A stretch of DNA of 64,000 nucleotides from Mobula hypostoma (Eukaryota), in NCBI RefSeq assembly GCF_963921235.1, contig NC_086121.1, positions 23,064,001-23,128,000 of the forward strand, in the 5' to 3' direction. Shown here piece after piece: positions 823 to 64,000 of this stretch (positions within the stretch are counted from its first letter, which is position 1; each line of letters starts with the position of its first letter). Both the position numbers and the translations under genes were made by a program. The notes under the pieces were generated by a model. That model worked only from the letters and a program-made list of their open reading frames with translations. It searched no databases and had not been told where the DNA came from.

Positions 823-973
823 CTTGTAGGCTGCTGATCTCCAGCTCCTTCTGCTGACGAAACTGCAGGTACTGCTGGCTGTGGGCCTCGGCTGCCTTCC
901 TGTGTTCCAGCTGCAGGCCGCTGTGCTGGAGCTGCAGCTCTGTGAGCTGCTTCCTCACCTCGTCGTGCTGGTT
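823..973 (-). CDS. GOLIM4: GOLIM4-like gene, internal coding exon (151 nt; equivalent of human exon 5), coiled coil
   Basis: Minus strand: ctctcacAG|AACCAGCAC...CTACAAG|GTgcac. Encodes NQHDEVRKQLTELQLQHSGLQLEHRKAAEAHSQQYLQFRQQKELEISSLQ(G), aligning without gaps to human GOLIM4 SQHEELKKQHSDLEEEHRKQGEDFSRTFNDHKQKYLQLQQEKEQELSKLK(E) as recalled. Phase 0 start matches the upstream exon. May be a paralogue rather than the orthologue. Confidence 0.88.
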
Positions 974-2044: not shown

Positions 2045-2098
2045 CTTCAGGATCTTGTGCTGGGAACTGAGAGCGCCGTATCGATTCATGGCATCTTG
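2045..2098 (-). CDS. GOLIM4: GOLIM4-like gene, 54-nt coding exon (equivalent of human exon 4)
   Basis: ttttcttgcAG|CAAGATGCC...CTGAAG|GTgggt. Encodes QDAMNRYGALSSQHKILK versus human QDSNSRYSALNVQHQMLK (recalled). Phase 0/0 splices in frame to both neighbouring exons. Confidence 0.92.
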
Positions 2099-3735: not shown

Positions 3736-3808
3736 TTGGCATCTATCCAAAAAAATAACATAATCAGCTTTGGCAGACAAACTACGTGGTCAAGCACTGA
3801 TGGAGCAT

Positions 3809-7409: not shown

Positions 7410-7690
7410 GCCACCTAGTCCTTCAAGTCCGAACATGGTTGATTTGCCTCAAGTTTCAACTCCTCTTGCCCCAGTTCTTCAAGGCCCTCAAGTCTCCAAT
7501 ATTTCAAATATTTATCTCCCTCCTCTTTAACTAGCCCCAGTCATCCAGCCTCCACTAATACCTCAGGTAGAGAATTCCAGAGATTCACCATCCTCTGTGA
7601 GACAGTTTCTAACCAGCTCAATTTTAGATGACCACCTCCTAATCTTGTCACCATGTCCCCTTGTTCGAGGCTCTCCCACTGGTGTAAACA
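7410..7690 (-). mobile_element. Old CR1 LINE 3' fragment
   Basis: GAATTCCAGAGATTCACCATCCTCTG and CATGTCCCCTTGTTCGAGGCTCTCCCAC correspond to the RVVNLWNS and GESRTRGH motifs. Confidence 0.65.
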
Positions 7691-7699
7691 GACCCACAG

Positions 7700-8494: not shown

Positions 8495-8504
8495 TCTTCG
8501 AACA

Positions 8505-8895
8505 ATGCTTTCATGAAAGGACAACCCTCCCATCTTATGACTTAGCCTACTGAATCTCTTCTGGACTGCTTCCAAGACTACCATATCCTTTCTTAGATAA
8601 GAGGATCCAAACTGCACGCAGTGCAGATGCAGCCTCACCAATACCCCGTATATTTGTAACAATATTTCTCTGTTGTTAAACTCCAGTCCCCGGCAATAAT
8701 GCCATTTGTCTTCTTAATTTCGTGCCACATCTGCACACTAATGTTTTGTGCATCATCAACATCAATGCCCAGATCGCTCATCTGCCGTCCCTGTCCAGAC
8801 TCTTTCTGAACCCTCACACCTGCTTTTTGATTCCTTCCACGGAGGCCGCTGACCTCGCACTTCCCCACACCAGAAGTCTCCAGCAAGGGTGTAAA
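8505..8895 (-). mobile_element. Old CR1 LINE ORF2 fragment (post-RT region)
   Basis: LQIYGVLVRLHLHCVQFGSSYLRKDMVVLEAVQKRFSRL and KCEV...RNQKA...SDLG...KKTNGIIA match CR1 ORF2 motifs [24 protein letters not shown] / KKANGML. Confidence 0.82.
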
Positions 8896-9177
8896 ATTCG
8901 GGGTGGCAGGGGAGTGAGACACACCTCACCCACCCGACTCCTCTCCCAGTTAACCGCTCACAGCGAATCTCACATCCAGGAAGGTCTTGCAGAACTCACA
9001 TCACTGTATGCAAAGCCGTAACAGTGAGGATGAAAAGACAAGGAGAGAAGATCAGATTAATCAAGGTCAGTGGTTAGGCGGTAAAGGATTTGCATCTTTA
9101 AACAGGAAGGCTTTGAAAGGAGATGAGTTTCAGCTTCGAGATGAAGAGGTACATTTATAAATAAAATGGGAACTCAC

Positions 9178-9227
9178 CTTCTCTTTGTTCAATGACTCTT
9201 GAGCTTCTAATTTATACACTAGAAAAT
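9178..9227 (-). CDS. GOLIM4: GOLIM4-like gene, 50-nt coding exon (equivalent of human exon 3)
   Basis: ttcctgtctctgcAG|ATTTTCTAGTG...GAGAAG|GTgagt. Encodes (D)FLVYKLEAQESLNKEK versus human DFLVYKLEAQETLNKGR (recalled). Phase 1/0. Confidence 0.93.
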
Positions 9228-9355
9228 CTGCAGAGACAGGAAAGGAAATGGAAATGAATTAACAATCATCAGGAACAGATGAATGCTTTTAATACTTTAA
9301 GCATTAGGCAGTCATCAATATCTCCATCAGACTACAAGGTACAGCAGCAGGCATA

Positions 9356-9545
9356 CCTGCCTTCTCCCCATAACCTTTGATGCTACAGTTGTCTGCGCCA
9401 ATGAATTCCACAGATCCCCCTCCCTCTGGCTAAAGAAATTCCTCCCCATCTCTGTTCTGAAGAGATGTCCTTCTACTCTGAGACTGTGCCCTCTGGCCCT
9501 AGACTCCCCCACTACTGGAAACATCCTCTCCACATCCACTCTATC
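9356..9545 (-). mobile_element. CR1 LINE 3' fragment whose last 61 bp are the first unit of the satellite
   Basis: ORF 9327-9539: DVERMFPVVGESRARGHSLRVEGHLFRTEMGRNFFSQREGDLWNSLAQ. There is an internal deletion before ATCAAAGGTTATGGGGAGAAGGCAGG. The sequence runs without a break into the array at 9485. Confidence 0.92.
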
Positions 9546-12500
9546 TGTGTCCTCTGGTCCGAGACTCCCCCCACCATAGGAAACATCCTCTCCACATCCA
9601 CTCTATCTGTGTCCTCTGGCCCTAGACTCCCCCACTACTGGAAACATCCTCTCCACATCCACTCTATCTGTGTCCTCTGGTCCTAGACTCCCCCACTACT
9701 GGAAACATCCTCTCCACATCCACTCTATCTGTGTCCTCTGGTCCTAGACTCCCCCACTACTGGAAACATCCTCTCCACATCCACTCTACCTGTGTCCTCT
9801 GGTCCGAGACTCCCCCCACCATAGGAAACATCCTCTCCACATCCACTCTATCTGTGTCCTCTGGTCCGAGACTCCCCCACTATAGGAAACATCCTCTCCA
9901 CATCCACTCTATCTGTGTCCTCTGGTCCGAGACTCCCCCACTACTGGAAACATCCTCTCCACATCCACTCTATCTGTGTCCTCTGGTCCGAGACTCCCCC
10001 ACTACTGGAAACATCCTCTCCACATCCACTCTATCTGTGTCCTCTGGTCCGAGACTCCCCCACTATAGGAAACATCCTCTCCACATCCACTCTATCTGTG
10101 TCCTCTGGTCCGAGACTCCCCCACTACTGGAAACATCCTCTCCACATCCACTCTATCTGTGTCCTCTGGTCCGAGACTCCCCCACTACTGGAAACATCCT
10201 CTCCACATCCACTCTATCTGTGTCCTCTGGTCCGAGACTCCCCCACTATAGGAAACATCCTCTCCACATCCACTCTATCTGTGTCCTCTGGTCCGAGACT
10301 CCCCCACTACTGGAAACATCCTCTCCACATCCACTCTATCTGTGTCCTCTGGTCCGAGACTCCCCCACTACTGGAAACATCCTCTCCACATCCACTCTAT
10401 CTGTGTCCTCTGGTCCTAGACTCCCCCACTACTGGAAACATCCTCTCCACATCCACTCTACCTGTGTCCTCTGGTCCGAGACTCCCCCACTACTGGAAAC
10501 ATCCTCTCCACATCCACTCTATCTGTGTCCTCTGGTCCGAGACTCCCCCCACCATAGGAAACATCCTCTCCACATTCACTCTACCTGTGTCCTCTGGTCC
10601 GAGACTCCCCCACTACTGGAAACATCCTCTCCACATCCACTCTATCTGTGTCCTCTGGTCCGAGACTCCCCCCACCATAGGAAACATCCTCTCCACATTC
10701 ACTCTACCTGTGTCCTCTGGTCCTAGACTCCCCCACTACTGGAAACATCCTCTCCACATCCACTCTATCTGTGTCCTCTGGCCCTAGACTCCCCCACTAC
10801 TGGAAACATCCTCTCCACATCCACTCTATCTGTGTCCTCTGGCCCTAGACTCCCCCACTACTGGAAACATCCTCTCCACATCCACTCTATCTGTGCCCTC
10901 TGGCCCTAGACTCCCCCACTACTGGAAACATCCTCTCCACATCCACTCTATCTGTGTCCTCTGGCCCTAGACTCCCCCACTACTGGAAACATCCTCTCCA
11001 CATCCACTCTATCTGTGCCCTCTGGCCCTAGACTCCCCCACTACTGGAAACATCCTCTCCACATCCACTCTATCTGTGTCCTCTGGTCCTAGACTCCCCC
11101 ACTACTGGAAACATCCTCTCCACATCCACTCTATCTGTGTCCTCTGGTCCGAGACTCCCCCACTACTGGAAACATCCTCTCCACATCCACTCTATCTGTG
11201 TCCTCTGGTCCGAGACTCCCCCACTACTGGAAACATCCTCTCCACATCCACTCTATCTGTGTCCTCTGGTCCGAGACTCCCCCACTACTGGAAACATCCT
11301 CTCCACATCCACTCTATCTGTGTCCTCTGGTCCTAGACTCCCCCACTATAGGAAACATCCTCTCCACATCCACTCTACCTGTGTCCTCTGGTCCTAGACT
11401 CCCCCACTACTGGAAACATCCTCTCCACATCCACTCTATCTGTGTCCTCTGGCCCTAGACTCCCCCACTACTGGAAACATCCTCTCCACATCCACTCTAT
11501 CTGTGTCCTCTGGTCCGAGACTCCCCCACTACTGGAAACATCCTCTCCACATCCACTCTATCTGTGTCCTCTGGTCCGAGACTCCCCCACTACTGGAAAC
11601 ATCCTCTCCACATCCACTCTATCTGTGTCCTCTGGTCCGAGACTCCCCCACTACTGGAAACATCCTCTCCACATCCACTCTATCTGTGTCCTCTGGCCCT
11701 AGACTCCCCCACTACTGGAAACATCCTCTCCACATCCACTCTATCTGTGTCCTCTGGCCCTAGACTCCCCCACTACTGGAAACATCCTCTCCACATCCAC
11801 TCTATCTGTGCCCTCTGGCCCTAGACTCCCCCACTACTGGAAACATCCTCTCCACATCCACTCTATCTGTGTCCTCTGGCCCTAGACTCCCCCACTACTG
11901 GAAACATCCTCTCCACATCCACTCTATCTGTGCCCTCTGGCCCTAGACTCCCCCACTACTGGAAACATCCTCTCCACATCCACTCTATCTGTGTCCTCTG
12001 GTCCTAGACTCCCCCACTACTGGAAACATCCTCTCCACATCCACTCTATCTGTGTCCTCTGGTCCGAGACTCCCCCACTACTGGAAACATCCTCTCCACA
12101 TCCACTCTATCTGTGTCCTCTGGTCCGAGACTCCCCCACTACTGGAAACATCCTCTCCACATCCACTCTATCTGTGTCCTCTGGTCCGAGACTCCCCCAC
12201 TACTGGAAACATCCTCTCCACATCCACTCTATCTGTGTCCTCTGGTCCTAGACTCCCCCACTATAGGAAACATCCTCTCCACATCCACTCTACCTGTGTC
12301 CTCTGGTCCTAGACTCCCCCACTACTGGAAACATCCTCTCCACATCCACTCTATCTGTGTCCTCTGGCCCTAGACTCCCCCACTACTGGAAACATCCTCT
12401 CCACATCCACTCTATCTGTGTCCTCTGGTCCGAGACTCCCCCACTACTGGAAACATCCTCTCCACATCCACTCTATCTGTGTCCTCTGGTCCGAGACTCC

Positions 12501-15500
12501 CCCACTACTGGAAACATCCTCTCCACATCCACTCTATCTGTGTCCTCTGGTCCGAGACTCCCCCACTACTGGAAACATCCTCTCCACATCCACTCTATCT
12601 GTGTCCTCTGGTCCGAGACTCCCCCACTACTGGAAACATCCTCTCCACATCCACTCTATCTGTGTCCTCTGGCCCTAGACTCCCCCACTACTGGAAACAT
12701 CCTCTCCACATCCACTCTATCTGTGTCCTCTGGTCCTAGACTCCCCCACTATAGGAAACATCCTCTCCACATCCACTCTACCTGTGTCCTCTGGTCCTAG
12801 ACTCCCCCACTACTGGAAACATCCTCTCCACATCCACTCTATCTGTGTCCTCTGGTCCTAGACTCCCCCACTACTGGAAACATCCTCTCCACATCCACTC
12901 TATCTGTGTCCTCTGGTCCGAGACTCCCCCACTACTGGAAACATCCTCTCCACATCCACTCTATCTGTGTCCTCTGGTCCGAGACTCCCCCACTACTGGA
13001 AACATCCTCTCCACATCCACTCTATCTGTGTCCTCTGGCCCTAGACTCCCCCACTACTGGAAACATCCTCTCCACATCCACTCTATCTGTGCCCTCTGGC
13101 CCTAGACTCCCCCACTACTGGAAACATCCTCTCCACATCCACTCTATCTGTGTCCTCTGGTCCGAGACTCCCCCACTACTGGAAACATCCTCTCCACATC
13201 CACTCTATCTGTGTCCTCTGGTCCGAGACTCCCCCACTACTGGAAACATCCTCTCCACATCCACTCTATCTGTGTCCTCTGGTCCGAGACTCCCCCACTA
13301 CTGGAAACATCCTCTCCACATCCACTCTATCTGTGTCCTCTGGTCCTAGACTCCCCCACTACTGGAAACATCCTCTCCACATCCACTCTATCTGTGTCCT
13401 CTGGTCCGAGACTCCCCCACTACTGGAAACATCCTCTCCACATCCACTCTATCTGTGTCCTCTGGCCCTAGACTCCCCCACTACTGGAAACATCCTCTCC
13501 ACATCCACTCTATCTGTGTCCTCTGGTCCGAGACTCCCCCACTATAGGAAACATCCTCTCCACATCCACTCTATCTGTGTCCTCTGGTCCGAGACTCCCC
13601 CACTACTGGAAACATCCTCTCCACATCCACTCTATCTGTGTCCTCTGGTCCTAGACTCCCCCACTACTGGAAACATCCTCTCCACATCCACTCTATCTGT
13701 GTCCTCTGGCCCTAGACTCCCCCACTACTGGAAACATCCTCTCCACATCCACTCTATCTGTGTCCTCTGGTCCGAGACTCCCCCCACCATAGGAAACATC
13801 CTCTCCACATCCACTCTATCTGTGTCCTCTGGTCCGAGACTCCCCCACTACTGGAAACATCCTCTCCACATCCACTCTATCTGTGTCCTCTGGTCCTAGA
13901 CTCCCCCACTACTGGAAACATCCTCTCCACATCCACTCTATCTGTGTCCTCTGGTCCGAGACTCCCCCACTACTGGAAACATCCTCTCCACATCCACTCT
14001 ATCTGTGTCCTCTGGTCCGAGACTCCCCCACTACTGGAAACATCCTCTCCACATCCACTCTATCTGTGTCCTCTGGTCCGAGACTCCCCCACTACTGGAA
14101 ACATCCTCTCCACATCCACTCTATCTGTGTCCTCTGGTCCGAGACTCCCCCACTACTGGAAACATCCTCTCCACATCCACTCTATCTGTGTCCTCTGGTC
14201 CGAGACTCCCCCACTATAGGAAACATCCTCTCCACATCCACTCTATCTGTGTCCTCTGGTCCGAGACTCCCCCACTACTGGAAACATCCTCTCCACATCC
14301 ACTCTATCTGTGTCCTCTGGTCCGAGACTCCCCCACTACTGGAAACATCCTCTCCACATCCACTCTACCTGTGTCCTCTGGTCCGAGACTCCCCCACTAC
14401 TGGAAACATCCTCTCCACATCCACTCTATCTGTGTCCTCTGGTCCTAGACTCCCCCACTACTGGAAACATCCTCTCCACATCCACTCTATCTGTGTCCTC
14501 TGGTCCGAGACTCCCCCACTACTGGAAACATCCTCTCCACATCCACTCTATCTGTGTCCTCTGGCCCTAGACTCCCCCACTACTGGAAACATCCTCTCCA
14601 CATCCACTCTATCTGTGTCCTCTGGTCCGAGACTCCCCCACTACTGGAAACATCCTCTCCACATCCACTCTATCTGTGTCCTCTGGTCCGAGACTCCCCC
14701 ACTACTGGAAACATCCTCTCCACATCCACTCTATCTGTGTCCTCTGGTCCGAGACTCCCCCACTACTGGAAACATCCTCTCCACATCCACTCTACCTGTG
14801 TCCTCTGGCCCTAGACTCTCCCACTACTGGAAACATCCTCTCCACATCCACTCTATCTGTGTCCTCTGGTCCGAGACTCCCCCACTACTGGAAACATCCT
14901 CTCCACATCCACTCTATCTGTGTCCTCTGGTCCGAGACTCCCCCACTACTGGAAACATCCTCTCCACATCCACTCTATCTGTGTCCTCTGGTCCGAGACT
15001 CCCCCACTACTGGAAACATCCTCTCCACATCCACTCTACCTGTGTCCTCTGGCCCTAGACTCCCCCACTACTGGAAACATCCTCTCCACATCCACTCTAT
15101 CTGTGTCCTCTGGTCCGAGACTCCCCCACTACTGGAAACATCCTCTCCACATCCACTCTATCTGTGTCCTCTGGCCCTAGACTCCCCCACTACTGGAAAC
15201 ATCCTCTCCACATCCACTCTATCTGTGTCCTCTGGTCCGAGACTCCCCCACTACTGGAAACATCCTCTCCACATCCACTCTATCTGTGTCCTCTGGTCCA
15301 AGACTCCCCCACTACTGGAAACATCCTCTCCACATCCACTCTATCTGTGTCCTCTGGTCCGAGACTCCCCCACTACTGGAAACATCCTCTCCACATCCAC
15401 TCTATCTGTGTCCTCTGGTCCGAGACTCCCCCACTACTGGAAACATCCTCTCCACATCCACTCTATCTGTGCCCTCTGGTCCGAGACTCCCCCACTATAG

Positions 15501-18500
15501 GAAACATCCTCTCCACATCCACTCTATCTGTGTCCTCTGGTCCGAGACTCCCCCACTACTGGAAACATCCTCTCCACATCCACTCTATCTGTGTCCTCTG
15601 GTCCGAGACTCCCCCGACTACTGGAAACATCCTCTCCACATCCACTCTATCTGTGTCCTCTGGTCCGAGACTCCCCCACTACTGGAAACATCCTCTCCAC
15701 ATCCACTCTATCTGTGTCCTCTGGTCCGAGACTCCCCCACTACTGGAAACATCCTCTCCACATCCACTCTATCTGTGTCCTCTGGCCCTAGACTCCCCCC
15801 ACCATAGGAAACATCCTCTCCACATCCACTCTACCTGTGTCCTCTGGTCCGAGACTCCCCCACTACTGGAAACATCCTCTCCACATCCACTCTATCTGTG
15901 CCCTCTGGCCCTAGACTCCCCCACTACTGGAAACATCCTCTCCACATCCACTCTATCTGTGTCCTCTGGTCCGAGACTCCCCCACTACTGGAAACATCCT
16001 CTCCACATCCACTCTATCTGTGTCCTCTGGCCCTAGACTCCCCCACTACTGGAAACATCCTCTCCACATCCACTCTATCTGTGTCCTCTGGTCCGAGACT
16101 CCCCCACTACTGGAAACATCCTCTCCACATCCACTCTATCTGTGTCCTCTGGTCCTAGACTCCCCCACTACTGGAAACATCCTCTCCACATCCACTCTAT
16201 CTGTGTCCTCTGGTCCGAGACTCCCCCACTACTGGAAACATCCTCTCCACATCCACTCTACCTGTGTCCTCTAGCCCTAGACTCCCCCACTACAGGAAAC
16301 ATCCTCTCCACATCCACTCTATCTGTGTCCTCTGGTCCGAGACTCCCCCACTACTGGAAACATCCTCTCCACATCCACTCTATCTGTGTCCTCTGGTCCT
16401 AGACTCCCCCACTACTGGAAACATCCTCTCCACATCCACTCTATCTGTGTCCTCTGGTCCGAGACTCCCCCACTACTGGAAACATCCTCTCCACATCCAC
16501 TCTATCTGTGTCCTCTGGTCCGAGACTCCCCCACTACTGGAAACATCCTCTCCACATCCACTCTATCTGTGTCCTCTGGTCCGAGACTCCCCCACTACTG
16601 GAAACATCCTCTCCACATCCACTCTATCTGTGTCCTCTGGTCCGAGACTCCCCCCACCATAGGAAACATCCTCTCCACATCCACTCTATCTGTGTCCTCT
16701 GGTCCGAGACTCCCCCACTACTGGAAACATCCTCTCCACATCCACTCTATCTGTGTCCTCTGGTCCGAGACTCCCCCACTACTGGAAACATCCTCTCCAC
16801 ATCCACTCTATCTGTGTCCTCTGGTCCGAGACTCCCCCCACCATAGGAAACATCCTCTCCACATCCACTCTATCTGTGTCCTCTGGTCCGAGACTCCCCC
16901 ACTACTGGAAACATCCTCTCCACATCCACTCTATCTGTGTCCTCTGGCCCTAGACTCCCCCACTACTGGAAACATCCTCTCCACATCCACTCTATCTGTG
17001 TCCTCTGGCCCTAGACTCCCCCACTACTGGAAACATCCTCTCCACATCCACTCTATCTGTGCCCTCTGGCCCTAGACTCCCCCACTACTGGAAACATCCT
17101 CTCCACATCCACTCTATCTGTGTCCTCTGGCCCTAGACTCCCCCACTACTGGAAACATCCTCTCCACATCCACTCTATCTGTGCCCTCTGGCCCCAGACT
17201 CCCCCACTACTGGAAACATCCTCTCCACATCCACTCTATCTGTGTCCTCTGGTCCTAGACTCCCCCACTACTGGAAACATCCTCTCCACATCCACTCTAT
17301 CTGTGTCCTCTGGTCCGAGACTCCCCCACTACTGGAAACATCCTCTCCACATCCACTCTATCTGTGTCCTCTGGTCCGAGACTCCCCCACTACTGGAAAC
17401 ATCCTCTCCACATCCACTCTATCTGTGTCCTCTGGTCCGAGACTCCCCCACTACTGGAAACATCCTCTCCACATCCACTCTATCTGTGTCCTCTGGTCCT
17501 AGACTCCCCCACTATAGGAAACATCCTCTCCACATCCACTCTATCTGTGTCCTCTGGTCCTAGACTCCCCCACTACTGGAAACATCCTCTCCACATCCAC
17601 TCTATCTGTGTCCTCTGGCCCTAGACTCCCCCACTACTGGAAACATCCTCTCCACATCCACTCTATCTGTGTCCTCTGGTCCGAGACTCCCCCACTACTG
17701 GAAACATCCTCTCCACATCCACTCTATCTGTGTCCTCTGGTCCGAGACTCCCCCACTACTGGAAACATCCTCTCCACATCCACTCTATCTGTGTCCTCTG
17801 GTCCGAGACTCCCCCACTACTGGAAACATCCTCTCCACATCCACTCTATCTGTGTCCTCTGGCCCTAGACTCCCCCACTACTGGAAACATCCTCTCCACA
17901 TCCACTCTATCTGTGTCCTCTGGCCCTAGACTCCCCCACTACTGGAAACATCCTCTCCACATCCACTCTATCTGTGTCCTCTGGCCCTAGACTCCCCCAC
18001 TACTGGAAACATCCTCTCCACATCCACTCTATCTGTGTCCTCTGGCCCTAGACTCCCCCACTACTGGAAACATCCTCTCCACATCCACTCTATCTGTGCC
18101 CTCTGGCCCTAGACTCCCCCACTACTGGAAACATCCTCTCCACATCCACTCTATCTGTGTCCTCTGGTCCTAGACTCCCCCACTACTGGAAACATCCTCT
18201 CCACATCCACTCTATCTGTGTCCTCTGGTCCGAGACTCCCCCACTACTGGAAACATCCTCTCCACATCCACTCTATCTGTGTCCTCTGGTCCGAGACTCC
18301 CCCACTACTGGAAACATCCTCTCCACATCCACTCTATCTGTGTCCTCTGGTCCGAGACTCCCCCACTACTGGAAACATCCTCTCCACATCCACTCTATCT
18401 GTGTCCTCTGGTCCTAGACTCCCCCACTATAGGAAACATCCTCTCCACATCCACTCTACCTGTGTCCTCTGGTCCTAGACTCCCCCACTACTGGAAACAT

Positions 18501-21500
18501 CCTCTCCACATCCACTCTATCTGTGTCCTCTGGCCCTAGACTCCCCCACTACTGGAAACATCCTCTCCACATCCACTCTATCTGTGTCCTCTGGTCCGAG
18601 ACTCCCCCACTACTGGAAACATCCTCTCCACATCCACTCTATCTGTGTCCTCTGGTCCGAGACTCCCCCACTACTGGAAACATCCTCTCCAAATCCACTC
18701 TATCTGTGTCCTCTGGTCCGAGACTCCCCCACTACTGGAAACATCCTCTCCACATCCACTCTATCTGTGTCCTCTGGTCCGAGACTCCCCCACTACTGGA
18801 AACATCCTCTCCACATCCACTCTATCTGTGTCCTCTGGCCCTAGACTCCCCCACTACTGGAAACATCCTCTCCACATCCACTCTATCTGTGTCCTCTGGT
18901 CCTAGACTCCCCCACTATAGGAAACATCCTCTCCACATCCACTCTACCTGTGTCCTCTGGTCCTAGACTCCCCCACTACTGGAAACATCCTCTCCACATC
19001 CACTCTATCTGTGTCCTCTGGTCCTAGACTCCCCCACTACTGGAAACATCCTCTCCACATCCACTCTATCTGTGTCCTCTGGTCCGAGACTCCCCCACTA
19101 CTGGAAACATCCTCTCCACATCCACTCTATCTGTGTCCTCTGGTCCGAGACTCCCCCACTACTGGAAACATCCTCTCCACATCCACTCTATCTGTGTCCT
19201 CTGGCCCTAGACTCCCCCACTACTGGAAACATCCTCTCCACATCCACTCTATCTGTGCCCTGGCCCTAGACTCCCCCACTACTGGAAACATCCTCTCCAC
19301 ATCCACTCTATCTGTGTCCTCTGGTCCGAGACTCCCCCACTACTGGAAACATCCTCTCCACATCCACTCTATCTGTGTCCTCTGGTCCGAGACTCCCCCA
19401 CTACTGGAAACATCCTCTCCACATCCACTCTATCTGTGTCCTCTGGTCCGAGACTCCCCCACTACTGGAAACATCCTCTCCACATCCACTCTATCTGTGT
19501 CCTCTGGTCCTAGACTCCCCCACTACTGGAAACATCCTCTCCACATCCACTCTATCTGTGTCCTCTGGTCCGAGACTCCCCCACTACTGGAAACATCCTC
19601 TCCACATCCACTCTATCTGTGTCCTCTGGCCCTAGACTCCCCCACTACTGGAAACATCCTCTCCACATCCACTCTATCTGTGTCCTCTGGTCCGAGACTC
19701 CCCCACTATAGGAAACATCCTCTCCACATCCACTCTATCTGTGTCCTCTGGTCCGAGACTCCCCCACTACTGGAAACATCCTCTCCACATCCACTCTATC
19801 TGTGTCCTCTGGTCCTAGACTCCCCCACTACTGGAAACATCCTCTCCACATCCACTCTATCTGTGTCCTCTGGCCCTAGACTCCCCCACTACTGGAAACA
19901 TCCTCTCCACATCCACTCTATCTGTGTCCTCTGGTCCGAGACTCCCCCACCATAGGAAACATCCTCTCCACATCCACTCTATCTGTGTCCTCTGGTCCGA
20001 GACTCCCCCACTACTGGAAACATCCTCTCCACATCCACTCTATCTGTGTCCTCTGGTCCTAGACTCCCCCACTACTGGAAACATCCTCTCCACATCCACT
20101 CTATCTGTGTCCTCTGGTCCGAGACTCCCCCACTACTGGAAACATCCTCTCCACATCCACTCTATCTGTGTCCTCTGGTCCGAGACTCCCCCACTACTGG
20201 AAACATCCTCTCCACATCCACTCTATCTGTGTCCTCTGGTCCGAGACTCCCCCACTACTGGAAACATCCTCTCCACATCCACTCTATCTGTGTCCTCTGG
20301 TCCGAGACTCCCCCACTACTGGAAACATCCTCTCCACATCCACTCTATCTGTGTCCTCTGGTCCGAGACTCCCCCACTATAGGAAACATCCTCTCCACAT
20401 CCACTCTATCTGTGTCCTCTGGTCCGAGACTCCCCCACTACTGGAAACATCCTCTCCACATCCACTCTATCTGTGTCCTCTGGTCCGAGACTCCCCCACT
20501 ACTGGAAACATCCTCTCCACATCCACTCTATCTGTGTCCTCTGGTCCGAGACTCCCCCACTACTGGAAACATCCTCTCCACATCCACTCTATCTGTGTCC
20601 TCTGGTCCTAGACTCCCCCACTACTGGAAACATCCTCTCCACATCCACTCTATCTGTGTCCTCTGGTCCGAGACTCCCCCACTACTGGAAACATCCTCTC
20701 CACATCCACTCTATCTGTGTCCTCTGGCCCTAGACTCCCCCACTACTGGAAACATCCTCTCCACATCCACTCTATCTGTGTCCTCTGGTCCGAGACTCCC
20801 CCACTACTGGAAACATCCTCTCCACATCCACTCTATCTGTGTCCTCTGGTCCGAGACTCCCCCACTACTGGAAACATCCTCTCCACATCCACTCTATCTG
20901 TGTCCTCTGGTCCGAGACTCCCCCACTACTGGAAACATCCTCTCCACATCCACTCTACCTGTGTCCTCTGGCCCTAGACTCTCCCACTACTGGAAACATC
21001 CTCTCCACATCCACTCTATCTGTGTCCTCTGGTCCGAGACTCCCCCACTACTGGAAACATCCTCTCCACATCCACTCTATCTGTGTCCTCTGGTCCGAGA
21101 CTCCCCCACTACTGGAAACATCCTCTCCACATCCACTCTATCTGTGTCCTCTGGTCCGAGACTCCCCCACTACTGGAAACATCCTCTCCACATCCACTCT
21201 ACCTGTGTCCTCTGGCCCTAGACTCCCCCACTACTGGAAACATCCTCTCCACATCCACTCTATCTGTGTCCTCTGGTCCGAGACTCCCCCACTACTGGAA
21301 ACATCCTCTCCACATCCACTCTATCTGTGTCCTCTGGCCCTAGACTCCCCCACTACTGGAAACATCCTCTCCACATCCACTCTATCTGTGTCCTCTGGTC
21401 CGAGACTCCCCCACTACTGGAAACATCCTCTCCACATCCACTCTATCTGTGTCCTCTGGTCCGAGACTCCCCCACTACTGGAAACATCCTCTCCACATCC

Positions 21501-54500: not shown

Positions 54501-57500
54501 CCACTACTGGAAACATCCTCTCCACATCCACTCTATCTGTGTCCTCTGGTCCTAGACTCCCCCACTACTGGAAACATCCTCTCCACATCCACTCTATCTG
54601 TGTCCTCTGGTCCTAGACTCCCCCACTATAGGAAACATCCTCTCCACATTCACTCTATCTGTGTCCTCTGGTCCTAGACTCCCCCACTACTGGAAACATC
54701 CTCTCCACATCCACTCTATCTGTGTCCTCTGGTCCTAGACTCCCCCACTACTGGAAACATCCTCTCCACATCCACTCTATCTGTGTCCTCTGGCCCTAGA
54801 CTCCCCCACTACTGGAAACATCCTCTCCACATCCACTCTATCTGTGTCCTCTGGTCCTAGACTCCCCCACTACTGGAAACATCCTCTCCACATCCACTCT
54901 AACTGTGTCCTCTGGTCCTAGACTCCCCCACTACTGGAAACATCCTCTCCACATCCACTCTATCTGTGTCCTCTGGTCCTAGACTCCCCCACTATAGGAA
55001 ACATCCTCTCCACATCCACTCTATCTGTGTCCTCTGGTCCTAGACTCCCCCACTACTGGAAACATCCTCTCCACATCCACTCTACCTGTGTCCTCTGGTC
55101 CTAGACTCCCCCACTACTGGAAACATCCTCTCCACATCCACTCTACCTGTGTCCTCTGGTCCTAGACTCCCCCACTACTGGAAACATCCTCTCCACATCC
55201 ACTCTATCTGTGTCCTCTGGTCCTAGACTCCCCCACTACTGGAAACATCCTCTCCACATCCACTCTATCTGTGTCCTCTGGTCCTAGACTCCCCCACTAC
55301 TGGAAACATCCTCTCCACATCCACTCTATCTGTGTCCTCTGGTCCGAGACTCCCCCACTACTGGAAACATCCTCTCCACATCCACTCTATCTGTGTCCTC
55401 TGGTCCTAGACTCCCCCACTACTGGAAACATCCTCTCCACATCCACTCTATCTGTGTCCTCTGGCCCTAGACTCCCCCACTACTGGAAACATCCTCTCCA
55501 CATCCACTCTATCTGTGTCCTCTGGTCCGAGACTCCCCCACTACTGGAAACATCCTCTCCACATCCACTCTATCTGTGTCCTCTGGTCCGAGACTCCCCC
55601 ACTACTGGAAACATCCTCTCCACATCCACTCTATCTGTGTCCTCTGGCCCTAGACTCCCCCACTACTGGAAACATCCTCTCCACATCCACTCTATCTGTG
55701 TCCTCTGGCCCTAGACTCCCCCACTACTGGAAACATCCTCTCCACATCCACTCTATCTGTGTCCTCTGGTCCTAGACTCCCCCACTACTGGAAACATCCT
55801 CTCCACATCCACTCTACCTGTGTCCTCTGGTCCTAGACTCCCCCACTATAGGAAACATCCTCTCCACATCCACTCTATCTGTGTCCTCTGGTCCAAGACT
55901 CCCCCACTACTGGAAACATCCTCTCCACATCCACTCTATCTGTGTCCTCTGGTCCGAGACTCCCCCACTACTGGAAACATCCTCTCCACATCCACTCTAT
56001 CTGTGTCCTCTGGTCCGAGACTCCCCCACTACTGGAAACATCCTCTCCACATCCACTCTATCTGAGTCCTCTGGCCCTAGACTCCCCCACTACTGGAAAC
56101 ATCCTCTCCACATCCACTCTATCTGTGTCCTCTGGTCCTAGACTCCCCCACTATAGGAAACATCCTCTCCACATCCACTCTACCTGTGTCCTCTGGTCCG
56201 AGACTCCCCCACTACTGGAAACATCCTCTCCACATCCACTCTATCTGTGTCCTCTGGTCCTAGACTCCCCCACTACTGGAAACATCCTCTCCACATCCAC
56301 TCTATCTGTGTCCTCTGGTCCGAGACTCCCCCACTACTGGAAACATCCTCTCCACATCCACTCTATCTGTGTCCTCTGGTCCTAGGCTCCCCTACTACAG
56401 GAAACATCCTCTCCACATCCACCCTATCTGTGTCCTCTGGTCCGAGACTCTCCCAGTATAGGAAACATCCTCTCCACATCCACTCTATCTGTGTCCTCTG
56501 GTCCGAGACTCCCCCACTACTGGAAACATCCTCTCCACATCCACTCTATCTGTGTCCTCTGGTCCTAGACTCCCCCACTATTGGAAACATCCTCTCCACA
56601 TCCACTCTATCTGTGTCCTCTGGTCCGAGACTCCCCCACTACTGGAAACATCCTCTCCACATCCACTCTATCTGTGTCCTCTGGTCCGAGACTCCCCCAC
56701 TACTGGAAACATCCTCTCCACATCCACTCTACCTGTGTCCTCTGGTCCGAGACTCCCCCACTACTGGAAACATCCTCTCCACATCCACTCTATCTGTGTC
56801 CTCTGGTCCTAGACTCCCCCACTACTGGAAACATCCTCTCCACATCCACTCTATCTGTGTCCTCTGGTCCTAGACTCCCCCACTACTGGAAACATCCTCT
56901 CCACATCCACTCTATCTGTGTCCTCTGGTCCTAGACTCCCCCACTACTGGAAACATCCTCTCCACATCCACTCTATCTGTGTCCTCTGGTCCTAGACTCC
57001 CCCACTACTGGAAACATCCTCTCCACATCCACTCTATCTGTGTCCTCTGGTCCTAGACTCCCCCACTACTGGAAACATCCTCTCCACATCCACTCTACCT
57101 GTGTCCTCTGGTCCTAGACTCCCCCACTACTGGAAACATCCTCTCCACATCCACTCTATCTGTGTCCTCTGGCCCTAGACTCCCCCACTACTGGAAACAT
57201 CCTCTCCACATCCACTCTATCTGTGTCCTCTGGTCCGAGACTCCCCCACTACTGGAAACATCCTCTCCACATCCACTCTATCTGTGTCCTCTGGTCCAGA
57301 CTCCCCCACTACTGGAAACATCCTCTCCACATCCACTCTATCTGTGTCCTCTGGTCCGAGACTCCCCCACTACTGGAAACATCCTCTCCACATCCACTCT
57401 ATCTGTGTCCTCTGGTCCTAGACTCCCCCACTACTGGAAACATCCTCTCCACATCCACTCTACCTGTGTCCTCTGGTCCTAGACTCCCCCACTACTGGAA

Positions 57501-59556
57501 ACATCCTCTCCACATCCACTCTATCTGTGTCCTCTGGCCCTAGACTCCCCCACTACTGGAAACATCCTCTCCACATCCACTCTATCTGTGTCCTCTGGTC
57601 CAGACTCCCCCACTACTGGAAACATCCTCTCCACATCCACTCTATCTGTGTCCTCTGGTCCGAGACTCCCCCACTACTGGAAACATCCTCTCCACATCCA
57701 CTCTATCTGTGTCCTCTGGTCCTAGACTCCCCCACTACTGGAAACATCCTCTCCACATCCACTCTATCTGTGTCCTCTGGTCCGAGACTCCCCCACTACT
57801 GGAAACATCCTCTCCACATCCACTCTATCTGTGTCCTCTGGCCCTAGACTCCCCCCACCATAGGAAACATCCTCTCCACATCCACTCTATCTGTGTCCTC
57901 TGGCCCTAGACTCCCCCCACTACAGGAAACATCCTCTCCACATCCACTCTATCTGTGTCCTCTGGTCCTAGACTCCCCCCACTACTGGAAACATCCTCTC
58001 CACATCCACTCTATCTGTGTCCTCTGGTCCTAGACTCCCCCACTACTGGAAACATCCTCTCCACATCCACTCTATCTGTGTCCTCTGGTCCTAGACTCCC
58101 CCACTACAGGAAACATCCTCTCCACATCCACTCTATCTGTGTCCTCTGGTCCTAGACTCCCCCACTACAGGAAACATCCTCTCCACATCCACTCTATCTG
58201 TGTCCTCTGGTCCTAGACTCCCCCACTACTGGAAACATCCTCTCCACATCCACTCTACCTGTGTCCTCTGGTCCTAGACTCCCCCCACTACTGGAAACAT
58301 CCTCTCCACATCCACTCTACCTGTGTCCTCTGGTCCTAGACTCCCCCACTACAGGAAACATCCTCTCCACATCCACTCTAGCTGTGTCCTCTGGTCCTAG
58401 ACTCCCCCACTACAGGAAACATCCTCTCCACATCCACTCTGTCTGTGTCCTCTGGTCCGAGACTCCCCACTACAGGAAACATCCTCTCCACATCCACTCT
58501 ATCTGTGTCCTCTGGTCCTAGACTCCCCCACTACTGGAAACATCCTCTCCACATCCACTCTACCTGTGTCCTCTGGTCCTAGACTCCCCCACTACTGGAA
58601 ACATCCTCTCCACATCCACTCTATCTGTGTCCTCTGGTCCAAGACTCCCCCACTACTGGAAACATCCTCTCCACATCCACTCTATCTGTGTCCTCTGGTC
58701 CGAGACTCCCCCACTACTGGAAACATCCTCTCCACATCCACTCTATCTGTGTCCTCTGGCCCTAGACTCCCCCACTACTGGAAACATCCTCTCCACATCC
58801 ACTCTATCTGTGTCCTCTGGTCCGAGACTCCCCCACTACTGGAAACATCCTCTCCACATCCACTCTATCTGTGTCCTCTGGTCCTAGACTCCCCCACTAC
58901 TGGAAACATCCTCTCCACATCCACTCTATCTGTGTCCTCTGGTCCAGAGACTCCCCCACTACTGGAAACATCCTCTCCACATCCACTCTATCTGTGTCCT
59001 CTGGTCCGAGACTCCCCCACTACTGGAAACATCCTCTCCACATCCACTCTATCTGTGTCCTCTGGCCCTAGACTCCCCCACTACTGGAAACATCCTCTCC
59101 ACATTCACTCTACCTGTGTCCTCTGGTCCGAGACTCCCCCACTACTGGAAACATCCTCTCCACATCCACTCTATCTGTGTCCTCTGGTCCGAGACTCCCC
59201 CACTACAGGAAACATCCTCTCCACATCCACTCTATCTGTGTCCTCTGGTCCGAGACTCCCCCACTACTGGAAACATCCTCTCCACATCCACTCTACCTGT
59301 GTCCTCTGGTCCGAGACTCCCCCACTACTGGAAACATCCTCTCCACATCCACTCTATCTGTGTCCTCTGGTCCGAGACTCCCCCACTACTGGAAACATCC
59401 TCTCCACATCCACTCTACCTGTGTCCTCTGGCCCTAGACTCCCCCACTACTGGAAACATCCTCTCCACATCCACTCTATCTGTGTCCTCTGGTCCTAGAC
59501 TCCCCCACTACTGGAAACATCCTCTCCACATCCACTCTATCTGTGTCCTCTGGTCC
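9485..59556. repeat. CR1-LINE-derived 61-bp satellite, ~50 kb, ~820 copies, with multi-kb higher-order structure
   Basis: Consensus TGTGTCCTCTGGTCCGAGACTCCCCCACTACTGGAAACATCCTCTCCACATCCACTCTATC, head-to-tail. Few recurrent variants (GGTCCG/GGTCCT/GGCCCT; CTACTGG/CTATAGG/CTACAGG/CCATAGG; TATC/TACC; C5/C6). Truncated by the gap. Confidence 0.99.
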
Positions 59557-59756
59557 NNNNNNNNNNNNNNNNNNNNNNNNNNNNNNNNNNNNNNNNNNNN
59601 NNNNNNNNNNNNNNNNNNNNNNNNNNNNNNNNNNNNNNNNNNNNNNNNNNNNNNNNNNNNNNNNNNNNNNNNNNNNNNNNNNNNNNNNNNNNNNNNNNNN
59701 NNNNNNNNNNNNNNNNNNNNNNNNNNNNNNNNNNNNNNNNNNNNNNNNNNNNNNNN
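59557..59756. other. Assembly gap (200 N, probably a fixed-size scaffold join)
   Basis: Run of exactly 200 N between two unrelated satellites. Confidence 0.97.
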
Positions 59757-62700
59757 GAGGGACTGAGAGACACCGGTCAGTGTACAGATCTCCCCCTTAG
59801 AGAGAGGGACTGAGAGACACCGGTCAGTGTACAGATCTCCCCCTGAGAGAGAGGGACCGAGAGGCACCGGTCAGTGTACAGATCTCCCCCTGAGAGAGAG
59901 GGGCTGAGAGACACCGGTCAGTGTACAGATCTCCCCCTGAGAGAGAGGGACTGAGAGACACCGGTCAGTGTACAGATCTCCCCCTGAGAGAGAGGGACTG
60001 AGAGACACCGGTCAGTGTACAGATCTCCCCCTGAGAGAGAGGGACGGAGAGACACCGGTCAGTGTACAGATCTCCCCCTGAGAGAGAGGGACCGAGAGAC
60101 ACCGGTCAGTTTACAGATCTCCCCCTGAGAGAGAGGGACTGAGAGACACCGGTCAGTGTACAGATCTCCCCCTGAGAGAGAGGGACTGACAGACACCGGT
60201 CAGTGTACAGATCTCCCCCTGAGAGAGAGGGACTGAGAGACACCGGTCAGTGTACAGATCTTCCCCTGAGAGAGAGGGACTGACAGACACCGGTCAGTGT
60301 ACAGATCTCCCCCTGAGAGAGAGGGACTGAGAGACACCGGTCAGTGTACAGATCTTCCCCTGAGAGAGAGGGACTGAGAGACACCGGTCAGTGTACTGAT
60401 CTCCCCTGAGAGAGAAGGACTGAGAGACACCGGTCAGGGTACAGATCTCCCCCTGAGAGAGAGAGGGACTGAGAGACACCGGTCAGTGTACCGATCTCCC
60501 TTGGAGAGTGAGGGACCGAGAGACACCGGTCAGTGTACAGATCTCCCCCTGAGAGAGAGGGACTGAGAGACACCGGTCAGTGTACAGATCTCCCCCTGAG
60601 AGAGAGAGTGATTGAGAGACACCGGTCAGTGTACAGATCTCCCCCTGAGAGAGAGGGACTGAGAGACACCGGTCAGTGTACAGATCTTCCCCTGAGAGAG
60701 AGGGACTGAGAGACACCGGTCAGTGTACAGATCTCCCCCTGAGAGAGAGGGACTGAGAGACACCGGTCAGTGTACAGATCTCCCCCTGAGAGAGAGGGAC
60801 TGAGAGACACCGGTCAGTGTACTGATCTCCCCTGAGAGAGAAGGACTGAGAGACACCGGTCAGGGTACAGATCTCCCCCTGAGAGAGAGGGACCGAGAGG
60901 CACCGGTCAGTGTACAGATCTCCCCCTGAGAGAGAGGGACTGAGAGACGCCGGTCAGTGTACAGATCACCCCTGAGAGAGAGGGACCGAGAGACACCGGA
61001 CAGTGTACAGATCTCCCCCTGAGAGAGAGGAACTGAGAGACACAGGTCAGTGTACAGATCTCCCCCTGAGAGAGAGGGACTGAGAGACACCGGTCAGTGT
61101 ACAGATCTCCCCCTGAGAGAGAGGGACTGACAGACACCGGTCAGTGTACAGATCTCCCCCTGAGAGAGGGGGACTGATAGACACCGGTCAGTGTACAGAT
61201 CTCCCCCTGAGAGAGAGGGACTGAGAGGCACCGGTCAGTGTACAGATCTCCCCCTGAGAGAGAGGGACTGAGCGACACCGGTCAGTGTACAGATCTCCCC
61301 CTGAGAGAGAGGGACTGAGCGACACCGGTCAGTGTACAGATCTCCCCCTGAGAGAGAGGGACTGAGAGACACCGGTCAGTGTACAGATCTCCCCCTGAGA
61401 GAGAGGGACTGAGAGACACCGGTCAGTGTACAGATCTCCCCCTGAGAGAGAGGGACTGAGAGACACCGGTCAGTGTACAGATCTCCCCCTGAGAGAGAGG
61501 GACTGAGAGACACCGGTCAGTGTACAGATCTCCCCCTGAGAGAGAGGGACTGAGAGACACCGGTCAGTGTACAGATCTCCCGCTGAGAGAGAGGGACTGA
61601 GAGACACCGGTCAGTGTACAGATCTCCTGCTGAGAGAGAGGGGCTGAGAGACACCGGTCAGTGTACAGATCTCCCCCTGAGAGAGAGGGACTGAGAGACA
61701 CGGGTCAGTGTACAGATCTCCCCCTGAGAGAGAGGGACTGAGAGACACCGGTCAGTGTACAGATCTCCCCCTGAGAGAGAGGGACTGAGAGACACCGGTC
61801 AGTGTACAGATCTCCCCCTGAGAGAGAGGGACTGAGAGACACCGGTCAGTGTACAGATCTTCCCCTGAGAGAGAGGGACTGAGAGACACCGGTCAGTGTA
61901 CAGATCTCCCCCTGAGAGAGAGGGACTGAGAGACACCGGTCAGTGTACAGATCTCCCCCTGAGAGAGAGGGACTGAGAGACACCGGTCAGTGTACTGATC
62001 TCCCCTGAGAGAGAAGGACTGAGAGACACCGGTCAGGGTACAGATCTCCCCCTGAGAGAGAGGGACCGAGAGGCACCGGTCAGTGTACAGATCTCCCCCT
62101 GAGAGAGAGAGGGACAGAGAGACGCCAGTCAGTGTACAGATCACCCCTGAGAGAGAGGGACCGAGAGACACCGGACAGTGTACAGATCTCCCCCTGAGAG
62201 AGAGGAACTGAGAGACACAGGTCAGTGTACAGATCTCCCCCTGAGAGAGAGGGACTGAGAGACACCGGTCAGTGTACAGATCTCCCCCTGAGAGAGAGGG
62301 ACTGACAGACACCGGTCAGTGTACAGATCTCCCCCTGAGAGAGAGGGACTGATAGACACCGGTCAGTGTACAGATCTCCCCCTGAGAGAGAGAGGCTGAG
62401 AGACACCGGTCAGTGTACAGATCTCCCCCTGAGAGAGAGGGACTGAGAGGCACCGGTCAGTGTACGGATCTCCCCCTGAGAGAGAGGGACTGAGCGACAC
62501 CGGTCAGTGTACAGATCTCCCCCTGAGAGAGAGGGACTGAGAGACACCGGTCAGTGTACAGATCTCCCCCTGAGAGAGAGGGACTGAGAGACACCGGTCA
62601 GTGTACAGATCTCCCGCTGAGAGAGAGGGGCTGAGAGACACCGGTCAGTGTACAGATCTCCCCCTGAGAGAGAGGGACTGAGAGACACGGGTCAGTGTAC

Positions 62701-64000
62701 AGATCTCTCCCTGAGAGAGAGGGACTGAGAGGCACTGGTCAGTGTACAGATCTCCCCCTGAGAGAGAGGGACTGAGAGACACCGGTCAGTGTACAGATCT
62801 CCCCCTGAGAGAGAGGGACTGAGAGACACCGGTCAGTGTACAGATCTCCCCCTGAGAGAGAGGGACTGAGAGACACCGGTCAGTGTACAGATCTCCCCCT
62901 GAGAGAGAGGGACCGAGAGGCACCGGTCAGTGTACAGATCTCCCCCTGAGAGAGAGGGGCTGAGAGACACCGGTCAGTGTACAGATCTCCCCCTGAGAGA
63001 GAGGGACTGAGAGACACCGGTCAGTGTACAGATCTCCCCCTGAGAGAGAGGGACTGAGAGACACCGGTCAGTGTACAGATCTCCCCCTGAGAGAGAGGGA
63101 CGGAGAGACACCGGTCAGTGTACAGATCTCCCCCTGAGAGAGAGGGACCGAGAGACACCGGTCAGTTTACAGATCTCCCCCTGAGAGAGAGGGACTGAGA
63201 GACACCGGTCAGTGTACAGATCTCCCCCTGAGAGAGAGGGACTGACAGACACCGGTCAGTGTACAGATCTCCCCCTGAGAGAGAGGGACTGAGAGACACC
63301 GGTCAGTGTACAGATCTTCCCCTGAGAGAGAGGGACTGACAGACACCGGTCAGTGTACAGATCTCCCCCTGAGAGAGAGGGACTGAGAGACACCGGTCAG
63401 TGTACAGATCTTCCCCTGAGAGAGAGGGACTGAGAGACACCGGTCAGTGTACTGATCTCCCCTGAGAGAGAAGGACTGAGAGACACCGGTCAGGGTACAG
63501 ATCTCCCCCTGAGAGAGAGAGGGACTGAGAGACACCGGTCAGTGTACCGATCTCCCTTGGAGAGTGAGGGACCGAGAGACACCGGTCAGTGTACAGATCT
63601 CCCCCTGAGAGAGAGGGACTGAGAGACACCGGTCAGTGTACAGATCTCCCCCTGAGAGAGAGAGTGATTGAGAGACACCGGTCAGTGTACAGATCTCCCC
63701 CTGAGAGAGAGGGACTGAGAGACACCGGTCAGTGTACAGATCTTCCCCTGAGAGAGAGGGACTGAGAGACACCGGTCAGTGTACAGATCTCCCCCTGAGA
63801 GAGAGGGACTGAGAGACACCGGTCAGTGTACAGATCTCCCCCTGAGAGAGAGGGACTGAGAGACACCGGTCAGTGTACTGATCTCCCCCTGAGAGAGAAG
63901 GACTGAGAGACACCGGTCAGGGTACAGATCTCCCCCTGAGAGAGAGGGACCGAGAGGCACCGGTCAGTGTACAGATCTCCCCCTGAGAGAGAGAGGGACT
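59757..64000. repeat. 47-bp satellite/minisatellite, ~90 copies in window, continuing past the window end
   Basis: Consensus GAGAGACACCGGTCAGTGTACAGATCTCCCCCTGAGAGAGAGGGACT. No evident similarity to the 61-mer. Confidence 0.98.

What the first reader, a model, noticed from the sequence alone, without database searches (positions are those of the whole stretch)
9178..64000. The giant array appears to lie inside an intron of a GOLIM4-like gene, starting ~256 bp from an exon acceptor
Seen: the exon 3 acceptor is at 9228-9229 and the array starts at 9485. I found no upstream exon (human exon 2 equivalent, VYEHRSRLEKSLQKER...) anywhere in 9230-64000. Inference: intron 2 is at least 50 kb of nearly pure satellite (over 54 kb if the gap join is right), transcribed in LINE-sense orientation if the gene is expressed. 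This would be a satellite-filled gigantic intron in an ordinary Golgi protein gene. All three exons have intact frames and GT-AG sites, suggesting the gene tolerates it.
Basis: partly seen in the sequence, partly recalled or inferred. Interest (0 to 1): 0.7.

Follow-up and report, generated by a model that had tools for sequence, protein, structure and literature searches.

The report
Satellite-swollen intron of ray GOLIM4-like gene
In the devil ray Mobula hypostoma, at least 50 kb of a young 61-letter tandem repeat, grown from a dead LINE fragment, sits 256 bases upstream of an intact exon of a conserved Golgi-protein gene. The gene spans 200 kb here against about 57 kb in a sister species, but whether it is transcribed and spliced across the repeat could not be tested.

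Summary
Three minus-strand exons (9227-9178, 2098-2045, 973-823), all GT-AG, splice into a peptide identical to residues 89-172 of the RefSeq protein "Golgi integral membrane protein 4-like" of Mobula hypostoma.

The 61-bp array (9484-59556, 820 copies, about 97% alike) starts 256 bp from the exon-3 acceptor. It has no interruption that could hide an exon.

The species' own protein has exon 2, and nothing in 9230-64000 matches it. The annotated gene spans 200.1 kb on one scaffold. The orthologue spans 57.2 kb in M. yarae/birostris, 55.9 kb in Hypanus and 41 kb in Pristis. So the array most likely lies in the intron upstream of exon 3.

- The 200-N gap separates two unrelated satellites. Beyond it is a 47-bp repeat with opposite strand composition. 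The 61-bp array therefore ends at a contig end, and the join is a scaffolding inference.
- Exon 2 itself was never seen.

On the gene-sense strand the 61-mer has no polyA hexamers and no splice-like sites, which fits tolerance of the array.

This is a new member of a known kind: satellite-containing long introns, and a TE-born satellite. The scan has noted other intronic satellites in this genome. Interest is moderate.

The parts
823..973 (-). Coding exon 5 of the GOLIM4-like gene (151 nt, residues 123-172 plus 1 nt)
   Evidence: AG/GT borders. The translation is identical to P0021. phmmer against 1.84 billion proteins finds GOLIM4-like proteins only.
2045..2098 (-). Coding exon 4 (54 nt, QDAMNRYGALSSQHKILK)
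   Evidence: AG/GT borders, identical to P0021 residues 105-122.
9178..9227 (-). Coding exon 3 (50 nt, (D)FLVYKLEAQESLNKEK). It starts inside the D codon, so the upstream exon must supply 1 nt.
   Evidence: AG at 9229-9228 and GT at 9177-9176. Identical to P0021 residues 88-104.
9228..9328 (-). Conserved 3' splice-site region of the upstream intron: polypyrimidine tract and branch-point-like CTGAT
   Evidence: About 88% identical to the sawfish orthologous intron. Similarity stops abruptly at about 9328. Highest acceptor score of the unique sequence (1-9483) on the gene strand.
9329..9483 (-). 3' tail of a LINE-like dispersed repeat, in gene sense, that runs seamlessly into the array
   Evidence: ORF 9327-9539(-) reads from the array into the tail. 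It aligns to another copy at 3266-3520(-). It is absent from the sawfish intron at this point.
9484..59556 (-). 61-bp satellite, 820 monomers, derived from the LINE segment just upstream of the retained tail
   Evidence: Tandem Repeats Finder. 342 monomers are identical to the consensus. The array is uninterrupted. It holds multi-kb internal duplications. The gene-sense strand has no polyA hexamers and no donor- or acceptor-like sites.
59557..59756 (.). 200-N assembly gap between two contigs
   Evidence: The assembly was scaffolded with YaHS on Omni-C data (bioRxiv 10.64898/2026.10.27.761883). The gap was left unfilled.
59757..64000 (.). Unrelated 47-bp satellite (at least 90 copies) that runs off the window. 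Its placement and orientation depend on the scaffold join.
   Evidence: On the minus strand each unit carries a strong acceptor-like site, about 20 per kb.

Best explanation
The window is part of the Mobula hypostoma gene for 'Golgi integral membrane protein 4-like'.

A LINE-like element inserted in gene sense about 100 bp upstream of the exon-3 acceptor, just outside a deeply conserved splice-site block. A 61-bp piece of that element then amplified in place to at least 50 kb, by tandem duplication and later multi-kb unequal exchange.

The array, the gap, and possibly the 47-bp array and further sequence lie in the intron between coding exon 2 (or exon 1 when exon 2 is skipped) and exon 3. This inflates the gene to about 200 kb.

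The gene probably still works, for three reasons. The array left the branch point, pyrimidine tract and acceptor untouched. Its gene-sense strand offers no polyadenylation hexamers and no usable splice sites, so RNA polymerase II would simply read through it. The intron would then be removed as one unit.

Shown here: the anatomy, the identity of the gene, the LINE origin of the monomer, the lineage-specific gene length, and the lack of processing signals. Inferred: that exon 2 lies directly beyond the arrays, that the array is transcribed, and that the intron is spliced normally.
For: - The spliced exons are an exact match to P0021 residues 89-172, and not to the M. yarae/birostris, Hypanus or Pristis proteins.
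- P0021 is named GOLIM4-like by NCBI, and relatives match at E down to 1e-118.
- P0021 contains exon 2, and exon 2 is absent from 9230-64000.
- The gene range is 200,124 bp on one 47.18-Mb record of GCA_963921235.1. The orthologue spans 57,220 bp in GCA_030028105.1, 55.9 kb in Hypanus and 41 kb in Pristis, where intron 2 is about 6.3 kb.
- Fndc10 follows about 10 kb downstream in both mobulids, so the locus is syntenic.
- RefSeq models for this assembly used the species' own RNA-seq (paper).
- Orthology with the sawfish runs up to 9328 and stops where the LINE tail begins.
- The monomer is homologous to another LINE-like copy in the window.
- The 61-mer in gene sense has 0 polyA hexamers in 50 kb. 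Its best donor score is 2.5 and best acceptor score 1.9, against 0.1-8.3 and 2.6-5.8 for the real sites (the weight matrix is rough and taken from memory).
Against: - Exon 2 and everything beyond 64000 were not seen, because the tool gave no DNA for the 200-kb locus.
- The 61-bp array ends at a contig end, so the link to exons 1-2 rests on Omni-C scaffolding plus a Gnomon model, whose evidence I could not inspect.
- No reads could be laid on the window, so there is no direct evidence for transcription or for the exon 2-3 junction.
- If the 47-bp array is really in the same intron in this orientation, it offers about 20 strong acceptor-like sites per kb, which fits a 'splice-inert' intron less well.
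- The short gene in M. yarae could partly reflect collapse or gaps in that assembly.
Confidence: 0.75

Rival explanations
1. Scaffolding artefact in part. The 61-bp array really abuts exon 3, but the 47-bp contig, and perhaps more of the extra 143 kb, are satellite-only contigs wrongly slotted into the intron by Hi-C scaffolding. The true intron length and content would then differ from the assembly.
For: The gap joins two unrelated satellites with opposite strand composition. Both contig ends are pure repeat, where proximity-ligation reads map ambiguously (own knowledge). The satellite seen in the window explains only 54.3 kb of the 142.9-kb excess.
Against: The annotated model still needs exons 1-2 upstream on the same scaffold. 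The published curation reports few manual edits and a clean contact map. None of this removes the contiguous 50 kb next to exon 3.
Confidence: 0.3
2. The array is not intronic. Exons 1-2 lie elsewhere, or transcripts start in the 256 bp (or LINE tail) between array and exon 3. The array would then be upstream flanking DNA, or the gene would be broken.
For: Exon 2 was not observed. The array sits at a contig end. LINE fragments can carry promoters (own knowledge).
Against: Exon 3 begins inside a codon and has no start codon. The membrane anchor is in exon 1 (P0021), so a transcript starting here could not make the Golgi protein. The RefSeq model has all exons on one scaffold, and the protein is 98% identical to the sister species' protein with no breaks. 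The acceptor region is conserved since the sawfish split.
Confidence: 0.08
3. The array length is an assembly artefact. Raw-nanopore assembly of a 97%-identical repeat mis-sized it, and the multi-kb internal duplicates are assembler errors.
For: Near-identical blocks recur at lags of 5064, 6163-6166 and 10684 bp. The assembly is built from Nanopore reads filtered and then polished.
Against: Assemblers more often collapse such arrays than expand them (own knowledge). Monomer variants are richly patterned: 63 distinct monomers and six variable columns, as expected of a real array. Contig N50 is 23 Mb.
Confidence: 0.12

Closest known systems
Satellite-containing gigantic introns of Drosophila Y-linked fertility genes (kl-3, kl-5 and others; PMC6508621, PMC11207136, PMC12965833)
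   Same: An intact protein-coding gene whose intron is filled with tandem satellite DNA that must be transcribed in gene sense and removed. Intron content changes quickly between related species.
   Different: The fly introns are megabase-sized, made of simple 5-10-bp repeats, Y-linked and expressed only in spermatocytes with a dedicated programme. Here the array is 50 kb or more of a 61-bp TE-derived unit. The gene belongs to a widely conserved Golgi-protein family. The chromosome is not known to be a sex chromosome. Expression was not tested.
Satellites born in place from a piece of a transposable element (same-genome cases in the scan: s1-141869, s1-141887, s1-142417)
   Same: The monomer is a short internal piece of a LINE-like element. 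The parent copy is still attached and in register. The array is highly homogeneous.
   Different: This case is defined by where it lies: 100 bp beyond a conserved splice-site block inside a conserved gene.
Pathogenic intronic repeat expansions in humans (FXN GAA, C9orf72 GGGGCC, RFC1 AAGGG; own knowledge)
   Same: A tandem repeat grows inside an intron of a housekeeping-type gene. A purine-rich or G-rich sense strand could favour R-loops.
   Different: Those are micro-repeats of a few kb that impair transcription or splicing. Here a 61-bp unit reaches at least 50 kb, and the gene appears intact and is annotated as complete.

Membership tests
GOLIM4 (GPP130) protein family gene | Significant sequence similarity to annotated GOLIM4 or GOLIM4-like proteins | tested here: met
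   Exon 5 alone finds only GOLIM4-like proteins (best E 1e-11). The spliced exons are an exact substring of P0021, 'Golgi integral membrane protein 4-like [Mobula hypostoma]'.
GOLIM4 (GPP130) protein family gene | N-terminal signal anchor, coiled-coil stem and acidic C-terminal tail | tested here: inconclusive
   These are visible by eye in the RefSeq protein P0021, but exon 1 and the 3' exons lie outside the window. Pfam gave no family for P0021.
GOLIM4 (GPP130) protein family gene | One-to-one orthology with human GOLIM4 rather than a 'GOLIM4-like' paralogue | not tested
   NCBI names vary between 'GOLIM4' and 'GOLIM4-like' among the hits. No tree was built.
Satellite DNA array | Long head-to-tail array of one unit with high homogeneity | tested here: met
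   820 copies of 61 bp, 97% matches, uninterrupted.
TE-derived satellite born in situ | Monomer homologous to an internal piece of a dispersed element, with the parent copy adjacent and in register | tested here: met
   ORF 9327-9539(-) runs from the array into the LINE tail. The region aligns with the copy at 3266-3520. The LINE family (CR1/L2) was not determined: Pfam gave nothing.
Satellite-containing giant intron | Array flanked on both sides by exons of one gene, same strand, contiguous sequence | tested here: inconclusive
   The 3' side is met: exon 3 is 256 bp away on the same contig. The 5' side rests on the RefSeq gene range of 200 kb across at least one scaffold gap, and exon 2 was not seen.
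Satellite-containing giant intron | Array transcribed in gene sense and removed by splicing | not testable with these tools
Satellite-containing giant intron | Intron size of hundreds of kb to megabases ('gigantism' as in the fly and human literature) | tested here: not met
   At least 50 kb is shown. The whole gene is 200 kb, so the intron is at most about 150 kb. That is long, but below the megabase class.

The most novel reading that the evidence does not exclude
Within about 20 million years, M. hypostoma added about 143 kb, largely young satellite DNA, to one intron of a conserved and probably broadly expressed Golgi-protein gene. The gene stays functional because only repeat units and orientations free of splice and polyA signals survive in introns. 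Together with the other intronic satellites noted in this genome (TUFM and a metabolic gene), this would make the devil ray a vertebrate model, outside the Y chromosome and the testis, for how ordinary genes are transcribed and spliced across tens of kb of satellite.
Probability: 0.25. Interest if true: 0.6.

Novelty: new member of a known kind. Interest (0 to 1): 0.4.

Why it matters
If the gene is expressed across the array, it is a natural test of how much homogeneous satellite an ordinary vertebrate gene can carry in an intron. At the usual polymerase speed of 2-4 kb per minute (own knowledge), the extra 143 kb would add roughly 35-70 minutes per transcript.

It also gives a dated (under about 20 My) example of a LINE fragment turning into a satellite inside a gene.

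It also carries a practical warning. The array ends a contig, and its plus strand carries ORFs of up to 920 codons that could seed false gene models.

It does not reveal a new mechanism.

Tried and rejected
I therefore made no read-laying run and have no junction or coverage evidence.
- Upstream DNA: the look-up of encoding contigs returned no DNA for the 200-kb M. hypostoma locus, nor for M. yarae or Hypanus.
- Nested gene models: I tried to reach the locus through the two models listed inside the gene (744 aa on the + strand, 184 aa on the - strand). I searched with the Tigger-like ORF 4833-5339 and with an array-encoded ORF. Neither search found them, and both remain unidentified.
- Other look-ups: P0042, P0001 and P0022 are not on record.
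- Family and feature searches: the protein Atlas on exon 5 gave only generic coiled-coil look-alikes. Pfam gave nothing for P0021 or the LINE ORFs. Rfam gave nothing in 1-11000.
- Earlier findings: searching near the place, or by the 47-mer sequence, gave nothing.
- Rejected ideas: that the 47-mer is a diverged continuation of the 61-mer, and that an exon hides inside either array.
Full report
**Observation**

The minus strand carries three short exons with AG/GT borders: 9227-9178 (50 nt), 2098-2045 (54 nt) and 973-823 (151 nt). Spliced together they give an 84-residue peptide. That peptide is an exact substring, at residues 89-172, of protein P0021 and of no other relative tested.

Tandem Repeats Finder reports a 61-bp array at 9484-59556 with 820 copies, 97% matches and no indels. 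Of the 820 monomers, 342 are identical to the consensus, and only six columns vary appreciably.

**The gap, tested first**

The left flank stops in the middle of a 61-mer. The right flank begins a different satellite of 47 bp (59757 to the end of the window, at least 90 copies, 95% matches).

The two consensus units share no meaningful similarity on either strand (best local score 8). The right-hand flank shares almost no 11-mers with everything left of the gap (5 of 407, none of them in the array). Strand composition also flips, with GC skew -0.54 on the left and +0.12 on the right.

So the gap is a join between two contigs that each end in a different repeat. It is not a hole inside one array. 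The published description of the assembly says it was built from Nanopore reads and scaffolded with YaHS on Omni-C data (bioRxiv 10.64898/2026.10.27.761883). A 200-N gap is that scaffolder's conventional spacer (own knowledge). The region is non-coding, so frame across it has no meaning.

**What the gene is**

Exon 5 alone, searched against 1.84 billion representative proteins, finds 15 proteins (best E 1e-11). The four whose sequences were fetched show the GOLIM4-type N-terminus, and three of them carry NCBI GOLIM4-like names.

A search with the best hit lists "Golgi integral membrane protein 4(-like)" from sharks, rays, birds and reptiles. P0021 is XP_062889588.1 of Mobula hypostoma. Its 98%-identical partner P0133 is from M. 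birostris (now M. yarae) and differs inside exon 5, with A instead of T at residue 133. The window has T, so the window is M. hypostoma. An earlier follow-up note in the scan names the same species (s1-141971).

**Where exon 2 is**

P0021 contains the exon-2 peptide (VVYEHRSRLERSLQKERNEHKKTKE). tblastn of P0021 against the window hits only the three exons.

A k-mer scan shows that 9501-59556 has no non-repeat stretch of 25 bp or more. The second array has only two 26-bp variant patches. Exon 2 therefore cannot be in 9230-64000.

The collection that holds the NCBI annotation gives the gene a range of 200,124 bp on one 47.18-Mb record of GCA_963921235.1. It lists two other gene models nested inside, and Fndc10 about 10 kb downstream. 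The tool returned no DNA for a range this long, so I never saw exon 2 or the sequence beyond 64000.

According to the paper, RefSeq models for this assembly were built with RNA-seq from the same project plus protein alignments. I could not inspect the evidence for this particular model.

**Comparison across species**

| Species | Gene range | Source |
|---|---|---|
| M. hypostoma | 200,124 bp | |
| M. yarae/birostris | 57,220 bp, with Fndc10 again about 10 kb downstream | |
| Hypanus sabinus | 55.9 kb | |
| Pristis pectinata | 41 kb | |

In the sawfish locus (L001), intron 2 is about 6.3 kb and intron 1 about 4.4 kb. The M. hypostoma gene is thus 142.9 kb longer than that of a congener. The paper says the two mobulids diverged about 20 Mya. 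The satellites visible in the window account for at least 54.3 kb of that excess. The rest lies outside the window.

**Anatomy of the 256 bp between array and acceptor**

The devil-ray and sawfish sequences align from exon 5 up to window position 9328. In the last about 100 bp before exon 3 they are about 88% identical. Similarity then ends abruptly.

From 9329 to 9483 the window holds the 3' tail of a LINE-like dispersed repeat, in gene sense. An ORF (9327-9539, minus strand) reads straight out of the first monomers into that tail. The whole stretch aligns with another copy of the repeat at 3266-3520.

So the element inserted just outside a conserved splice-site block. A 61-bp piece of it then amplified in place.

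Inside the array there are near-identical multi-kb blocks at lags of 5064, 6163-6166 and 10684 bp. This pattern is the signature of later unequal exchange. Less likely, it reflects assembly error.

**Would a transcript survive the array?**

On the gene-sense strand the 61-mer array has no AATAAA or ATTAAA in 50 kb. Its best donor-like score is 2.5 and its best acceptor-like score is 1.9. The three real donors score 0.1-8.3 and the three real acceptors 2.6-5.8.

The sense strand is 41% G and 68% purine, so it has no pyrimidine tracts. This fits read-through and removal of the intron as one unit, but it is an inference.

The 47-mer behaves differently. In the orientation given by the scaffold, each unit carries a pyrimidine tract plus CAG|G that scores above the real exon-3 acceptor, about 20 such sites per kb, with no donors. 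If that array really lies in the same intron in this orientation, the splicing machinery must ignore about 90 decoy acceptors in the window alone. Alternatively the contig is misplaced or inverted.

**What could not be done**

Attempts to reach the upstream DNA through the nested gene models failed.

**Verdict**

The far side of the gap is another satellite held only by a scaffold join. The intron's 5' boundary and its expression rest on the RefSeq model, not on anything seen here.

The closest known systems are the satellite-filled giant introns of Drosophila Y-linked fertility genes (PMC6508621, PMC11207136, PMC12965833) and satellites born in place from TE fragments. The scan has recorded several of the latter in this same genome, along with first-reader notes of other intronic satellites (s1-143241, s1-143135, unchecked).

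This is a new member of a known kind, of moderate interest: a clean, dated vertebrate case that becomes valuable only if expression across the array is demonstrated.

Noticed in passing
window 9229-9328 (minus strand) and L001 13041-13141: The about 100 bp of intron just upstream of exon 3 is about 88% identical between devil ray and sawfish, as conserved as the exon itself. The LINE inserted exactly at its outer edge. It may be a splicing-regulatory block for the small exon 3 or the cassette exon 2.
   Followed up: partly
window 9731-59498, plus strand: The consensus 61-mer is open in all three frames on the plus strand, giving mechanical ORFs of up to 920 codons (33361-36123). No annotated protein of 81-257 aa resembles them. 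They are a trap for gene predictors.
   Followed up: partly
window 59757-64000, minus strand: Each 47-bp unit carries a near-consensus 3' splice site: a branch-point-like CTGAC, a 13-nt pyrimidine tract and CAG|G. That is about 20 per kb, with no donor sites.
   Followed up: partly
window 31671-35899, 10708-15588, 42647-44218: Multi-kb blocks of the array recur almost identically at lags of 5064, 6163-6166 and 10684 bp. They are either segmental duplications within the array or an assembly artefact.
   Followed up: partly
window 4833-5342 (+): A 169-codon ORF in intron 3 is 68% identical to 'tigger transposable element-derived protein 1-like [Mobula hypostoma]' (P0134). It also resembles the tails of two Hypanus 'LSM12 homolog' models, which probably include TE sequence.
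   Followed up: partly
window 7920-8172: A 45/87-bp minisatellite (about 5.7 copies, 80% matches) in intron 3.
   Followed up: no
P0001 (Amblyraja radiata isoform X3) compared with P0021: The skate isoform joins exon 1 directly to exon 3, so the 75-nt exon 2 is a skipped cassette in at least one batoid. In such transcripts the array-bearing intron would run from exon 1 to exon 3.
   Followed up: no
RefSeq locus of P0021, outside or overlapping the window: Two gene models are nested in the 200-kb gene. One is a 744-aa model on the gene strand at gene-relative 54.7-60.5 kb. The other is a 184-aa model on the opposite strand spanning 98 kb (63-161 kb), which probably bridges the satellite region. 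Neither could be identified.
   Followed up: partly
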